Below are positions 16,615-31,495 of a DNA stretch of 64,000 bases, piece after piece. Where the stretch lies: assembly GCA_030704615.1 (NCBI GenBank), contig CM060731.1, positions 55,924,001 to 55,988,000 of the forward strand, read 5' to 3'. The position numbers were made by a program, and so were the translations under genes. Numbering within the stretch: the stretch's first letter is position 1; each line of letters begins with the position of its first letter. Source of the stretch: Takakia lepidozioides. Its lineage: Eukaryota > Plantae > Bryophyta. The notes beneath the pieces are model-generated. The model was not told where the DNA came from, searched no databases, and was given only the letters and a program-made list of their open reading frames with translations.

Positions 16615-19600
16615 TCACCAGTAATCCCCACAAGAACAAACCCCATCTTCGAAGTGATGAAAGCGGTTAGCATCCCGAACAAGAATTGCTCGGCCAACAA
16701 TCTTTGAGATGAACTTGGTGGCAGTGTGGCAGTCACCACACACCCGAAGATTCTTGATGACACGGAGAGGTGTCCCAGGGGCCGTGCTGATCAGCCCAAA
16801 AGCAATGGCCAGCTTCTCACTGTGGTGGCAAAGAGTGACTTCCTTTCTCTCCTCCTCCACATCATGCAATACAAAGTGCGTGTCAGGCACATACCCTGCC
16901 TCCTTCATCGGCCCAGACAATCTTCTCAGCTCAGCATGGATTTCCTCAAGTTTTGGATGCAATTTGTCATCCACAATGAAGGTGTGCACCCTGTTGCTGA
17001 CCTCAATGCAGCAGTGACCTGGCTCCTTCCTAACACCTCTGACCTTCATCATTTTTCTCACCTTTGCACTATCATCCCACCTGCCAGCTGCAGCATAGAT
17101 GTTTGATAGCAACACATAAGTTGCGGCATCCTGTTGATCCCACTTGAGTATAGATGTTGCCGCACGTTCCGCCATCTCCACATTGCCATGAATTCTGCAG
17201 GCACCTAGCAAGGCCATCCATACCACAGCATTTGGTTTCATTGGCATTTTGTTAATAAAATCCTCTGCCTCATCCAATTGTCCTGCACGGCCAAGAAGGT
17301 CCACCATGCAGCCAAAGTGCTCCACAGCTGGAGTGATGCCATGATCTTGACTTAGGGAGTTGAAGTAGTATCTACCTTCATCCACTAGGCCAGCATGGCT
17401 ACATGAAGAGAGAACACATATAAAGGTGATACTGTTCAGCTTCAAGCCTTCCATTTGCATTTCTTGAAATAGTTGCAGGGCCTCCATATCACGACCATGC
17501 TGGCCATATCCTGCAATCATTGCGGTCCATGACACCACGTTTCGTTGGGCCATATTGTCAAACACTCCCTTTGCGTCCTTGAGGCTCCCACATTTTGCAT
17601 ACATATCCACCAGGGTATTGTTAAGAATGACGTCAGGTGCAATTCCAGCTGTCATGATGTCACCATGGACATCTTTACCCTTCTCCAGGGCTGCCAGGCT
17701 TGCACATGCATTGCAAATGCTTACGAACGTGACCTGGTTCGGTTTCACCCCTTGCTCTATCATTTGCTCATACATCTCCAAAGCCTTCATCCCACGCCCA
17801 TGCTGGGCATATCCTGAGATCATGGTGGTCCACGACACCACATCTCGTTGGACCATATTGTCAAACACTCCCTTTGCATCCTTGAGGCTTCCGCATTTGG
17901 CATACATATCAACCAGGGTGTTGTTCAGAATGAGATCTGGTACAATTCCAGCTTTGACAATGTCGCCATGTACCTCTTTGCCTTTTTCCAGGGCTGCCAG
18001 GCTTGCACAAGCATTGCAAACACTTACGTACGTGACCTGGTTGGGCTTCACCCCTTCCTGCATCATTTGCTCATACGTCTCCAAAGCCTCCATCCCGCAT
18101 CCATGCTGGGCACATCCTGCTATCAATGCAGTCCATGACACCACATTTTGTTCAGCCATACTGTCGAACACTTCCTTTGCATCCTTGACGCTCCCGCATT
18201 TGGCATACATATCCACCAGGGCATTGTTCAGAATGACATCTGGTACAATACTAGTCTTGATGATGTCACCATGAACCTCTTTGCCCTTCTCCAGGGCTGT
18301 CAGGCTTGCACACGCATTGCAAACGCTTGCAAACGTGACCTGGTTGGGCTTCACCCCTTCCCACATCATTTGCTCATAAGTCTCCAAAGCCTCCATCCCA
18401 CACCCAGCACGGGTATATCCTGCGATCATCACATTCCAGCACACCACATCTCGTTGGGGCGTATGGTCGAACACTTCCTGTGCATCCTTGATTCTCCCAC
18501 ATTTGGCATACATGTTCATCAGGGCAGTGTTCAGAATGACATCTGGTACGATTCCAGTTTTGACAATATCACCATGGACCTCTTTGCCCGTTTCCAGGGC
18601 TCCCAGGCTCGCACATGCATTGCAAATGCAAACAAACGTGATGTGGTTGGGCTTCACCCCTTCTTGCATCATTTGCTCATATGTCTCCAAGGCATTCTTA
18701 CCACATCCATGCTTGATAAATCCTGCAATCAATATATTCCATGTCACCAAACCTCGTTCAGGCATTTTGTTGAACACTTGGTGTGCATCCACGATGCTCC
18801 CACATTTCACATACATGTTGAGAAGGGTGTTTTGCAGAAAAATGCTTGGCTTGAATGCACTTTGGATGATGTGAGTGTGCACCTGCTGTCCCGAATCCAG
18901 GCATTTCATCTGGATGCACTTATACAAGAGACAAACATAAGCATCTGAATCTGCCGAAATGCCTCTATGGTTCAAGCTTTGTAGTGCCTCTTTCAATTGC
19001 CCTGTGTCACACAGCATCCTCACATGACCAGAATTGCCAGAAGAGGTCTTGTGGACTTCCTCTCTTCGTCCTCTTTCGGAAGCTGTGGCTATGGTGGAGG
19101 TGCCTGATTTTATCAACTGTGCTGCTGCTGCTGCTTCCAGTTGGCCACTGACCCATGCATGTTTCTTGTAGCTACCAATCCACAGGGAATCATACGTAGG
19201 AATCTGCACCCACCACCCCTCAGCTTTTCCTGCCCGGCACTATTATTGCAAACATCCTCCCCTTTCTGCTAGCAGCTGACAAAGGCAGCCTAACGTTTTC
19301 TAGCAAACACCCCAACCCAACTTATCACAGACTAGTTCTTATGTTGAATTGCTACAATGTGCTGGGGAGAAAGAGATTGTACTCATAAGACGTTGTTTGC
19401 CGTAGCCTTGTGGCCATTGACCCCGCGCCCAGTTTGAGCGGGAACAAAAGGGACAGAACCTACCTCTGTCAGGGGCTGACGTTGGTAGTAAGACTTACCT
19501 CCATATAAAGAATTAATCCGGGTTTTCCAGATATCCTCTAGAAATCCCTTCACACAAGCATCAATCTGCTGTGTGTGATTAGCCCAAAAACTAGGCCTCA

Positions 19601-30700: not shown

Positions 30701-31495
30701 TCTGCATGTAGCCATGCTGGTCTAGTGGATGAAGGCAAGTACTACTTTGACTCCATGAGTCAAGATCACGATGTCACTCCAGCAGTGGAGCACTTTGGCT
30801 CCATGGTGGACCTTCTTGGCCGTGCAGGGCGATTGGAGGAGGCAGAGGACTTCATTAACATAATGCCAATGAAACCAGATTCTGTGGTTTTGAGGGCCTT
30901 GCTTGGTGCCTGCAGAATCCATGGCAATGTGGAGATGGCTGAACGTGCAGCAACGTCTATTCTCAAGTGGGATGAACAGGATGCTGCAGCTTATGTGTTG
31001 CTATCAAACATCTACGCTGCAGCTGGCAGGTGGGACGATAGTGCAAAGGTGAGAAAAATGATGAAGGTCAGAGGGGTTAGAAAGGAGCCAAGTCGCTGCT
31101 GCATTGAGGTTGGCAACAGGGTGCACACCTTTGTTGTAGATGACAAATTGAATCCCAAAATTAAGGAAATCCATGCTGAGCTGAGAAGATTGTCTGGGCA
31201 GATGAAGGAGGCAGGGTATGTGCCTGACACACGTTTTGTATTGCATGATGTGGGGGAGGAGCTAAAGGAAGTTTCTCTTTGCCACCACAGTGAGAAGCTG
31301 GCCATTGGTTTTGGGCTGATCAGCACGCCCCCTAGGACGCCTCTCCGTCTTATCAAGAATCTTCGGGTGTGTGGTGACTGCCACACCTCCACCAAGTTCA
31401 TCTCAAAGATAGTTGGCCGAAGAATTTTGGTACGGGACGCTAACCGCTTTCACCACTTTGAAGATGGGGTTTGTTCTTGTGGGGATTACTGGTGA
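24708..31495 (+). CDS. PPR-DYW gene 2: PLS-PPR-E1-E2-DYW with three PDF-motif units upstream (candidate exons 24708-24777, 24962-25041, 25321-~25360, 25513-25586, 27913-28046, 28210-28304, 28571-31495); 5' exons partly damaged
   Basis: 963-aa ORF 28604-31495 intact to DYW; acceptor at 28570 gives in-frame THARGPDFKHKMTYDSLWIDSYKKPAWV; exon 27913-28046 is 134 nt versus 133 nt in gene 1 (+1 T near 27966). Confidence 0.85.
25608..27744 (+). mobile_element. Second copy of the same LINE, more 5'-truncated, inside an intron of gene 2
   Basis: Near-identical to the reverse complement of 19378-~21515; 13-bp TSD TCTTACTGTAGAA at 25595-25607 and 27745-27757; frameshifts near 26346 and 27200. Confidence 0.95.

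What the first reader, a model, noticed from the sequence alone, without database searches (positions are those of the whole stretch)
16615..31495. PPR-DYW editing deaminases fused to OSB-type PDF (ssDNA-binding) motifs hidden in small upstream exons
Seen: splicing at GT-AG sites gives gene 1 LEQHWHEFFKDPSQWWDNRNGT|TKPRSPDYRYKQRTPVVLWIDDGLNPPWVKEK and gene 2 EEKLWKVYFSDRSQWWGNRGKK|THARGPDFKHKMTYDSLWIDSYKKPAWVDGQL. The last half-motif lies in the same exon and frame as the whole PLS-E-DYW ORF. Known: this matches the ~50-aa PDF motif of plant organellar single-stranded DNA-binding (OSB) proteins, which carries their ssDNA binding. Canonical PLS-DYW factors have only a transit peptide before the repeats. 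Inference: a family of editors tethered to nucleoid ssDNA or transcription bubbles (co-transcriptional editing), or able to act on ssDNA. I do not know of a description of this architecture but cannot search for one. The ORF track misses it because every motif is split by an intron.
Basis: partly seen in the sequence, partly recalled or inferred. Interest (0 to 1): 0.9.

Follow-up and report, generated by a model that had tools for sequence, protein, structure and literature searches.

The report
PPR-DYW editing genes with PDF modules

Summary
Two head-to-head paralogous PLS-E-DYW genes (ORFs 16615-19209 minus, 28604-31495 plus) are preceded by small GT-AG exons encoding halves of the OSB-type PDF motif.

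- **Motif identity:** a PDF HMM built only from OSB-type proteins hits both halves, exon by exon (E 7.7e-11 to 1.8e-4).
- **Intron position:** it matches annotated PDF-PPR genes of Diphasiastrum and Sphagnum, and an OSB-type gene of Ceratopteris.
- **Splicing:** one transcriptome-like contig, identical to the window, lacks exactly the predicted intron 24112-24268.
- **Distribution:** 35 of the 119 closest database homologues carry 1-3 N-terminal PDF units (lycophyte, mosses, liverwort). None of 55 seed-plant proteins does.
- **Literature:** no paper in the searchable library links PDF with PPR.

This locus is eroded. The plus gene keeps only unit C intact; unit B has frameshifts and a LINE in its intron. 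The minus gene has lost the PDFKHK core of unit C, and its intact unit B lies behind an in-frame stop with no ATG. The PDF exons are no better conserved than the introns, while the PPR-DYW ORFs are under purifying selection (Ka/Ks 0.28).

The ssDNA or nucleoid-tethering idea is untested. The scan has already found this family at seven or more other loci of this genome.

The parts
28571..31495 (+). PLUS gene, last exon: second half of PDF unit C (28571-~28669, with the PDFKHK core), a linker, then the PLS array, E1/E2/E+ and the DYW deaminase (HSE and CGDCH present). The annotated ORF ATG is at 28604; the stop is included.
   Evidence: PDF HMM E 7.7e-11. Acceptor AG at 28569-28570.
28210..28304 (+). 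PLUS gene, exon C1: first half of PDF unit C (...EEKLWKVYFSDRSQWWGNRGKK). It ends in phase 0 at a GT donor.
   Evidence: HMM E 3.6e-7. Splice dinucleotides. Paralogue contigs join B2-type exons to position 28207-28209.
27913..28046 (+). PLUS gene, exon B2: degenerate second half of unit B (SPNHRQK instead of SPDY/FKHK, and a +1 frameshift before LW). In the frame compatible with C1 it holds ATGs at about 27959 and 28022.
25608..27747 (+). 5'-truncated LINE (RVT_1) inserted in the intron of PLUS unit B. It is 99.1% identical to the LINE in the minus gene.
25520..25588 (+). PLUS gene, exon B1 relic: first half of unit B with a frameshift, loss of the FF pair and W>G. It is not significant against the HMM.
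24961..25041 (+). PLUS gene, exon A1: first half of a third, most upstream PDF unit (…MEERWQEFFKDPSEWWDSSGDI), with AG acceptor and GTGAGC donor. It is homologous to minus B1.
   Evidence: HMM E 5.8e-4. Contigs cross both of its splice sites unspliced.
25321..25367 (+). PLUS gene, exon A2 relic: SPDYRHK only. The LW...P.WV part is missing.
   Evidence: HMM E 0.09.
24269..24334 (-). MINUS gene, exon B1: intact first half of PDF unit B (LEQHWHEFFKDPSQWWDNRNGT). An in-frame stop lies 13 codons upstream (24376-24374) with no ATG between. The transcript contig continues unspliced upstream to at least 24639.
   Evidence: HMM E 3.5e-7. X2 record 9.
23979..24111 (-). MINUS gene, exon B2: intact second half of unit B (…SPDYRYK…LWIDDGLNPPWVKEK), followed by an in-frame ATG at 24003.
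   Evidence: HMM E 8.9e-6. It is joined directly to 24269 in a contig with 0 mismatches.
23752..23840 (-). MINUS gene, exon C1: first half of unit C (…EKLWKQFCLDPSEWWENGGDK).
   Evidence: HMM E 1.8e-4.
19374..23650 (-). Full-length LINE (ORFs 20409-23642 with RVT_1, and 19383-20381) inserted in the last intron of the MINUS gene.
16615..19203 (-). MINUS gene, last exon: remnant of the second half of unit C (a 10-codon deletion removed PDFKHK; YDSLWIGSYKKHAWV is left), then the PLS array (one PLS triplet, 102 aa, shorter than in plus), E1/E2/E+ and DYW with HSE and CGDCH.
56140..56700 (+). Decayed third family fragment: a PPR piece fused to a C1-like exon, an intron, and a C2-like GPDFKHK followed by stops.
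   Evidence: HMM E about 1e-3.

Best explanation
The region holds two head-to-head paralogues of a large, old family of organellar C-to-U RNA-editing factors (PLS-E-DYW pentatricopeptide repeat proteins). In this family the PPR array is preceded by one to three copies of the ~55-residue PDF module, otherwise known from the organellar ssDNA-binding OSB proteins.

Each PDF unit is encoded by two small exons, with the intron at a fixed motif position (after ...WWDNR..K). The last half-unit is continuous with the single large PPR-E-DYW exon. An OSB-type gene has the same two-exon unit. I therefore infer that the module moved between the two gene families by exon shuffling, before bryophytes and vascular plants diverged.

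At this locus the ancestral gene had three units (A, B, C). After an inverted duplication (Ks about 0.36) the PPR-DYW parts stayed under purifying selection, while the PDF region drifted:
- The plus gene keeps only unit C intact.
- The minus gene keeps unit B intact, but it probably lies in the 5' UTR. Its unit C has lost its core.
- Young LINE copies landed independently in one upstream intron of each gene.

Likely proteins start at an ATG near the end of exon B2, which is conserved in both genes, or at 28604.

Inferred function, not shown: where intact, the PDF module is an accessory single-strand nucleic-acid-binding unit at the N-terminal end of the PPR array. That end faces the 5' side of the bound RNA. 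The module would add non-specific affinity for single-stranded nucleic acid (RNA, or ssDNA of the nucleoid) to a sequence-specific editor.
For: **Architecture**
- Pfam domains of the two ORFs.
- OSB-trained PDF HMM hits on both half-exons.
- GT..AG at every predicted intron.

**Link to OSB**
- A profile of the window's two second halves retrieves 218 proteins at E<=1e-3 among 1.84 billion.
- These include Amborella 'protein OSB3' (6e-13) and proteins with a Pfam SSB domain.
- They also include 11 PPR proteins of Diphasiastrum, Sphagnum and Adiantum with the motif at the N-terminus.

**Same intron position**
- Seen in annotated genes of Diphasiastrum (L001) and Sphagnum fallax (L002).
- Seen in a Ceratopteris SSB-domain gene with two PDF units (L003).

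**Distribution**
- 35 of the 119 closest homologues carry 1-3 N-terminal PDF units.
- Diphasiastrum 26/32, Calypogeia 3/4, Ceratodon 1/2, Sphagnum 1/1; Cryptomeria 0/24, Ginkgo 0/29.
- In a tree of the C-terminal 330 aa, the window pair groups with PDF-bearing proteins (support 91) and the label is strongly clustered.

**Same fold**
- The AF2 model of a PPR-borne PDF unit has pLDDT 90.4.
- In the ESM Atlas it matches a Streptophyta SSB-domain cluster at TM 0.91 and three PPR/DYW clusters at 0.82-0.87.

**Splicing**
- X2 contig record 9 (691 nt, 0 mismatches) joins 24111 to 24269.
- A 157-nt skip at this place is seen in one contig of each run.
- Paralogue contigs join B2-type exons to the C1 acceptor.

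**Selection**
- Ka/Ks is 0.28 for the whole ORF and 0.24 for the E-DYW part.

**ssDNA binding of the PDF motif in OSB1/OSB2**
- Reported by Zaegel et al. 2006, as summarised in PMC6963530 and PMC4166229.
Against: **For this locus**
- PDF exons B2 and C1 are 73-75% identical between the paralogues. The neighbouring intron stretches are 68-86% identical, so selection on the exons is not visible.
- Plus unit B has frameshifts. Minus unit C has lost PDFKHK. Minus unit B lies behind an in-frame stop with no ATG.
- Contigs also cover introns, and they cross the A1 splice sites unspliced.
- The junction 28304/28571 was not among the 15 joints displayed; 50 were hidden.
- The runs are only guessed to be RNA, so the intron-less contig could come from a retrocopy.
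- No clear transit peptide or first exon was established for either gene.

**For function**
- Nothing here tests nucleic-acid binding.
- Moss editing factors are routinely expressed without their N-termini and still edit in E. coli (PMC10482289). If those factors carry a PDF, it is not needed for catalysis.
Confidence: 0.78

Rival explanations
1. At this locus the PDF exons are only relics. The genes are expressed, but the mature proteins start downstream of or inside the last half-motif (ATG 28604 in plus; in minus an ATG after the damaged unit). The upstream exons act as 5' UTR or retained-intron sequence, so neither protein has a working PDF module.
For: - No exon-versus-intron conservation difference.
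- Frameshifts, a core deletion, LINE insertions, an in-frame stop and missing ATGs.
- Contigs cover intron 3 of the plus gene (28363-28566, 28409-28511) and cross the A1 splice sites unspliced.
- The N-terminal 70 codons have a higher Ka/Ks (0.47) than the rest.
Against: - Plus unit C is complete, is in frame, and scores 7.7e-11 and 3.6e-7.
- Both genes keep an in-frame ATG near the end of exon B2 that would include unit C.
- B1-B2 splicing of the minus gene is seen.
- The same last-unit arrangement is annotated in other species.
Confidence: 0.35
2. Both genes are dead duplicates (pseudogenes) in a transposon-rich region. The open PPR-DYW frames are only young and not yet broken.
For: - The family is hugely multicopy: 3003 and 5590 contigs lay on 6 kb at >=92% likeness.
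- A decayed third fragment lies in the same window.
- Other loci of this genome were judged decayed by earlier notes.
- The 5' end of the minus gene looks truncated by the inverted duplication.
Against: - Ks is 0.36 with Ka/Ks 0.28 over 860 codons. Two ORFs of 864 and 963 codons are intact, and the catalytic HSE and CGDCH motifs are conserved. Such divergence without any stop is not expected for neutral sequence.
- A spliced contig from the minus gene exists.
Confidence: 0.12
3. The resemblance to the PDF motif is convergent or due to chance, and the 'exons' are fortuitous open stretches.
For: - The motif is short.
- Pfam has no model for it.
Against: - The HMM E-values for both halves are significant, and the halves are in the right order with GT-AG between them.
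- The reverse search finds OSB proteins at E down to 1e-25.
- The intron position is shared with OSB-type and PPR genes of other plants.
- The predicted fold is the same, TM 0.91.
Confidence: 0.01

Closest known systems
PLS-class PPR-E-DYW organellar RNA-editing factors (for example the moss PPR56/PPR65 type and Arabidopsis DYW-type factors)
   Same: - A PLS repeat array, E1/E2/E+ motifs and a C-terminal DYW cytidine deaminase with HxE and CxxCH.
- One large exon for the whole RNA-binding and catalytic part.
- The closest database relatives are such proteins, at 46-59% identity.
   Different: - One to three PDF modules in small upstream exons lie between the presumed presequence and the first PPR.
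- Reviews of PPR architecture list RRM, LAGLIDADG, SMR, NYN, CBS and SAP as extra domains, not PDF (PMC9459714).
- A 2026 kingdom-wide survey of editing-factor domain fusions does not mention it (PMC13386178).
[quoted passage not shown] 2006)
   Same: - The ~55-residue PDF motif, with the same conserved W, WWDNR, PDFKHK, LW and P.W positions.
- The same predicted fold.
- The same two-exon structure of each unit, and tandem multiplication of units.
   Different: - There is no OB-fold/SSB-like domain in the window's genes.
- PDF is N-terminal to a PPR array here, not C-terminal to an OB-fold.
- The partner domains bind and deaminate RNA.
PPR proteins with accessory nucleic-acid-binding or catalytic domains (PPR4 with RRM, PPR-SMR, PRORP with NYN, OTP51 with LAGLIDADG)
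   Same: A sequence-specific PPR tract combined with a second nucleic-acid-related module.
   Different: - Those are mostly P-class proteins.
- Their modules have Pfam models and have been described.
- The PDF module has no Pfam model and no solved structure.

Membership tests
PLS-E-DYW PPR editing factor | Tandem P/L/S pentatricopeptide repeats | tested here: met
   PPR_2, PPR, PPR_1 and PPR_3 at E 1e-53 to 1e-104 in both ORFs.
PLS-E-DYW PPR editing factor | E1/E2 (and E+) motifs followed by a DYW deaminase with HxE and CxxCH zinc ligands and a terminal DYW | tested here: met
   E_motif at 1.6e-18 and 2.4e-20, DYW_deaminase at 2.8e-42 and 9.8e-45. HSEK, CGDCH and ...CGDYW are read in both translations.
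PLS-E-DYW PPR editing factor | N-terminal organelle targeting peptide | tested here: inconclusive
   No first exon with a presequence could be fixed. Minus: an in-frame stop upstream of B1. Plus: only a speculative 23-codon exon at 24708-24777. No targeting predictor was available.
PLS-E-DYW PPR editing factor | Site-specific C-to-U editing of organellar transcripts | not testable with these tools
   Needs genetics or a heterologous editing assay.
PDF motif (OSB-type module) | About 50-58 residues with the conserved pattern W..FF.(D/N)P..WWDNR..K....PDFKHK.T...LW.....P.WV | tested here: met
   OSB-trained HMM: plus unit C scores 3.6e-7 (first half) and 7.7e-11 (second half); minus unit B scores 3.5e-7 and 8.9e-6. 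In a 102-unit alignment the invariant positions are W8, D20, F33, K36, W43 and W52. Plus unit C has G at D20 (WWGNR). Minus unit B has Y at F33.
PDF motif (OSB-type module) | Binds single-stranded DNA | not testable with these tools
   Known only for OSB1/OSB2 from the literature.
OSB protein family | Central OB-fold / SSB-like domain upstream of the PDF motifs | tested here: not met
   No PF00436 or any other OB-fold hit in the ORFs or upstream exons. OSB-type hits P0003, P0009 and P0203 do have it. The genes are therefore not OSB family members; they share only the PDF module.
PDF-PPR-DYW family of seed-free plants (as annotated in Diphasiastrum, Sphagnum, Calypogeia, Ceratodon, Adiantum) | The last PDF unit is split by a phase-0 intron after ...R..K, with its second half in the same exon as the whole PPR array | tested here: met
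   Window: 28304|28571 and 23752|19203. Diphasiastrum L001: residues 76-102 | 102-957. Sphagnum L002: 45-74 | 72-790.

The most novel reading that the evidence does not exclude
The PDF module is a functional part of most DYW editing factors of seed-free land plants. It either anchors them to single-stranded DNA of the transcribing or replicating nucleoid (co-transcriptional editing), or it supplies the extra single-strand affinity that seed plants obtain from MORF/RIP helper proteins. This would explain why the module is frequent in liverwort, moss and lycophyte editors and absent from their 55 closest seed-plant homologues seen here. A more remote version: it lets a DYW deaminase act on ssDNA.
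Probability: 0.2. Interest if true: 0.85.

Novelty: new variant of a known kind. Interest (0 to 1): 0.6.

Why it matters
PPR-DYW proteins are the enzymes of plant organellar C-to-U editing and are being developed into programmable RNA editors. A conserved accessory module sits on a large share of the editors of liverworts, mosses and lycophytes (and on some fern PPR proteins). It has no Pfam model and no solved structure, and its only known activity is ssDNA binding. It has gone unnoticed because an intron splits it.

If it contributes to substrate capture or to sub-organellar location, that bears on two points. One is how editing is coupled to transcription. The other is why seed-free plants edit without MORF helpers. 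It could also be a useful add-on for engineered editors.

The tests are simple, in moss or in E. coli. This particular locus adds little beyond another example of the family, and it is an eroded one.

Tried and rejected
- **Pfam on the exon peptides:** no family at E<=10, so no model exists for the motif.
- **The search for homologous proteins on the N-terminal 90 residues, and on a 310-aa piece restricted to residues 1-40:** nothing found, because the word index and length window are too strict.
- **ESM Atlas feature search with the 70-aa exon start:** only noise, at 0.79 or below.
- **Zaegel et al. 2006 (PMC1785405):** not held.
- **PDB sequence and fold searches for the PDF unit:** no match.
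- **The look-up of encoding contigs for P0131, P0018 and P0200:** not on record; longer isoforms worked.
- **Depth from the contig runs:** not usable to tell exons from introns, because depth is one figure per contig. The runs are only guessed to be RNA.
- **Chance match and OSB membership:** both considered and rejected; see the rival explanations and the membership test.
- **Joined exons:** All searches used single exons by reference, or natural full-length proteins from the databases. Folding or searching the joined model of the window's own genes was left out.
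Full report
**What is in the sequence**

The finding's span holds two divergently oriented genes. The minus-strand ORF 16615-19209 (864 codons) and the plus-strand ORF 28604-31495 (963 codons) are both complete PLS-class PPR proteins. 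Each has E, E+ and DYW deaminase domains (Pfam), and the zinc-ligand motifs HSE and CGDCH and the terminal DYW are intact.

The two ORFs are about 84% identical in DNA and 80% identical in protein. They differ by one PLS triplet (102 residues). Ka/Ks is 0.28 at Ks 0.36, and 0.24 over the E-DYW part. Both have therefore been under purifying selection since they duplicated.

**The upstream exons**

I read both upstream regions and compared them with each other. This gives three PDF-like units, which I call A, B and C. Each is encoded by a first-half exon (…LW..FF.DPS.WWDNR..K) and a second-half exon (…PDFKHK…LWI…P.WV…). Every predicted intron is GT..AG.

The second half of unit C is continuous with the PPR ORF in both genes.

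The rest is damaged.
- Plus unit B has a frameshift in each half-exon and altered core residues. A 2.1-kb 5'-truncated LINE (25608-27747) sits in its intron.
- Plus unit A has an intact first half (24961-25041). Its second half stops after SPDYRHK.
- Minus unit C has lost ten codons, including PDFKHK.
- Minus unit B is intact, but its frame has a stop 13 codons upstream and no ATG.
- The 4.5-kb last 'intron' of the minus gene is a full-length LINE (19374-23650). It is 99.1% identical to the plus-gene copy, so the two insertions are young and independent.
- A third, decayed fragment of the same gene type lies at 56140-56700.

Both genes keep an in-frame ATG near the end of exon B2 (28022 in plus, 24003 in minus). 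Translation from it would begin just before unit C.

**Is it the OSB PDF motif?**

Pfam has no model for the motif, so I tested it in both directions.

First direction: a profile of the window's two second halves (alignment A4, single exons by reference) was run against 1.84 billion representative proteins.
- It found 218 proteins at E<=1e-3 and 29 at E<=1e-10.
- Among them are Amborella 'protein OSB3' (6e-13) and proteins with a Pfam SSB domain followed by several motif copies.
- There are also seed-plant, fern and green-algal proteins of OSB size.

Second direction: I built an HMM from 13 full units of these OSB-type proteins only and ran it on all 2850 six-frame segments of the window.
- The top hits are exactly the predicted exons, with E from 7.7e-11 to 5.8e-4.
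- First-half exons match model positions 2-27. Second-half exons match positions 24-57.

An AlphaFold2 model of a natural PPR-borne unit (Ceratodon protein P0233, residues 48-106, with a 102-unit alignment) is confident: pLDDT 90.4, helix, three short strands, helix.
- It has no relative in the PDB by sequence or by fold.
- In the ESM Atlas it superposes at TM 0.91 on a Streptophyta SSB-domain cluster, and at 0.82-0.87 on three PPR/DYW clusters.

**The architecture exists elsewhere**

Eleven of the best 150 hits of the motif search are PPR proteins with the motif at the N-terminus. They come from Diphasiastrum complanatum, several Sphagnum species and two Adiantum species, and are annotated only as hypothetical or PPR proteins.

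Of the 119 closest homologues of the plus ORF (best identity 59%, so the window's species is not in the protein database), 35 carry one to three N-terminal PDF units:
- Diphasiastrum 26 of 32
- the liverwort Calypogeia 3 of 4
- Ceratodon 1 of 2
- Sphagnum 1 of 1
- Adiantum 0 of 4
- Cryptomeria 0 of 24
- Ginkgo 0 of 29

In a quick tree of the C-terminal 330 residues (the PDF region is not included), the window pair groups with PDF-bearing proteins of Diphasiastrum, Calypogeia and Sphagnum (support 91). All seed-plant rows fall in clades without PDF. This is FastTree only, and 'no PDF' labels on ORF-only predictions are unreliable.

I mapped annotated proteins onto their genes.
- In Diphasiastrum (…WWDTRFDK | TNARYPDFKHK…) and in Sphagnum fallax (…WFDHRLEK | VNARYPDFKHK…) the intron sits at the same motif position as in the window (…WWGNRGKK | THARGPDFKHK…).
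- In both, the second half is in the same exon as the whole PPR array.

A Ceratopteris SSB-domain gene with two PDF units has the same intron inside each unit, and introns between the units. The two-exon PDF unit is therefore shared by the two gene families. This points to exon shuffling as the route of the fusion (inference). The fusion predates the split of bryophytes and vascular plants (inference from the distribution).

**Expression**

Two small contig sets (33 and 48 Mb, so transcriptome-sized; their RNA nature is only a guess of the index) hold parts of the region. I laid them on 23600-29599, which is 6000 letters.
- One X2 contig of 691 nt matches 23978-24111 and then 24269-24639 without a single mismatch. 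It lacks exactly the predicted intron of minus unit B.
- Its first 186 nt lie elsewhere, as expected if it is also spliced at 23979.
- A 157-nt skip at this place is seen in one contig of each run.
- The same contig runs on unspliced upstream of B1 to at least 24639. This places the in-frame stop inside the transcript and argues that minus unit B is not translated as part of the main ORF.
- Paralogue contigs join B2-type exons to the C1 acceptor of the plus gene.
- The key junction 28304/28571 was not among the 15 joints shown (50 were hidden).
- Contigs covering introns exist too, so splicing of C1 to C2 at this locus remains unshown.
- Thousands of contigs (3003 and 5590) lay on the 6 kb at 92% likeness or more. 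The gene family and the LINE are very numerous in this organism.

**Selection on the PDF exons here**

Between the two paralogues, exons B2 and C1 are 73% and 75% identical. The flanking intron stretches are 68-86% identical, and the PPR ORFs are about 84% identical. Together with the frameshifts and deletions, this says the PDF region has been drifting at this locus. Only plus unit C is a credible working module.

**Literature**

Full-text searches found 'PDF motif' in only three relevant papers, all about OSB and organellar DNA. None links it with PPR proteins.
- A review of Physcomitrium PPR proteins lists RRM, LAGLIDADG, SMR, NYN, CBS and SAP as extra domains (PMC9459714).
- A 2026 OSB family survey required an OB-fold for membership (PMC13393729).
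- A 2026 kingdom-wide survey of editing-factor domain fusions does not mention it (PMC13386178).

The library lacks most subscription journals, so 'undescribed' is provisional.

PDF binding of ssDNA, with preference over dsDNA and RNA, is reported for OSB1 and OSB2 (summaries in PMC6963530 and PMC4166229). Moss editing factors are usually assayed without their N-termini and still edit in E. coli (PMC10482289). A PDF module, if those factors have one, is therefore not needed for catalysis.

**Earlier notes of this scan**

After my own tests I looked up the genome's notes. At least seven other loci of the same genome were read the same way by other agents: a PDF-PPR-DYW family, common in seed-free plants, with no paper found and several copies decayed. 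This agrees with my results but is not independent evidence.

**Verdict**

The family is a new variant of a known kind: a DYW editing factor with an OSB-type module.

The mechanistic idea of nucleoid or ssDNA tethering is open. This locus itself is a partly eroded example.

The spliced protein model of the window's genes was therefore never searched or folded as a whole.

Noticed in passing
window 19374-23650 (-) and 25608-27747 (+): Two copies of one LINE family (RVT_1), 99.1% identical over 2142 bp: one full-length and one 5'-truncated. Each is inserted in an upstream intron of one of the two PPR-DYW paralogues, in the gene's own orientation. Contig depth rises steeply towards the LINE 3' end, which suggests thousands of truncated copies.
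   Followed up: partly
window 56140-56700 (+): A chimeric pseudogene fragment. A PPR repeat piece runs directly into a C1-like PDF exon, then an intron and a decayed GPDFKHK exon with stops. The 56740-56900 stretch repeats the B2/intron-2 sequence of the plus gene.
   Followed up: partly
window 24708-24777 (+): A possible first exon of the plus gene: an ATG, 23 codons plus 1 nt, then GT. This is phase-compatible with the AG acceptor of exon A1 at 24961. It lies in the ~560-bp space between the two divergent genes. No contig shows this splice.
   Followed up: no
model med7810baf1f3 (PDF unit), ESM Atlas search: Two clusters of phage (Uroviricota) hypothetical proteins (199 and 187 aa) superpose on the PDF fold at TM 0.78 and 0.67 over 57-58 residues. 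A bacterial Rad52/Rad22 cluster matches at 0.47. This is a possible lead to the origin of the plant PDF module.
   Followed up: no
window 28604-31495 versus 16615-19209: The PLS arrays are made of very similar ~100-residue P-L-S triplets, and the two paralogues differ by exactly one triplet (102 aa). This suggests repeat gain or loss by unequal recombination inside the array.
   Followed up: partly
whole window / genome: The scan index lists 5084 windows of 64 kb on 224 pieces (about 325 Mb) for this genome. The closest PPR proteins in the databases are only 46-59% identical (lycophyte, moss, liverwort, gymnosperm). The species is therefore a seed-free land plant whose proteome is not in the protein collection. 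I did not identify it.
   Followed up: no
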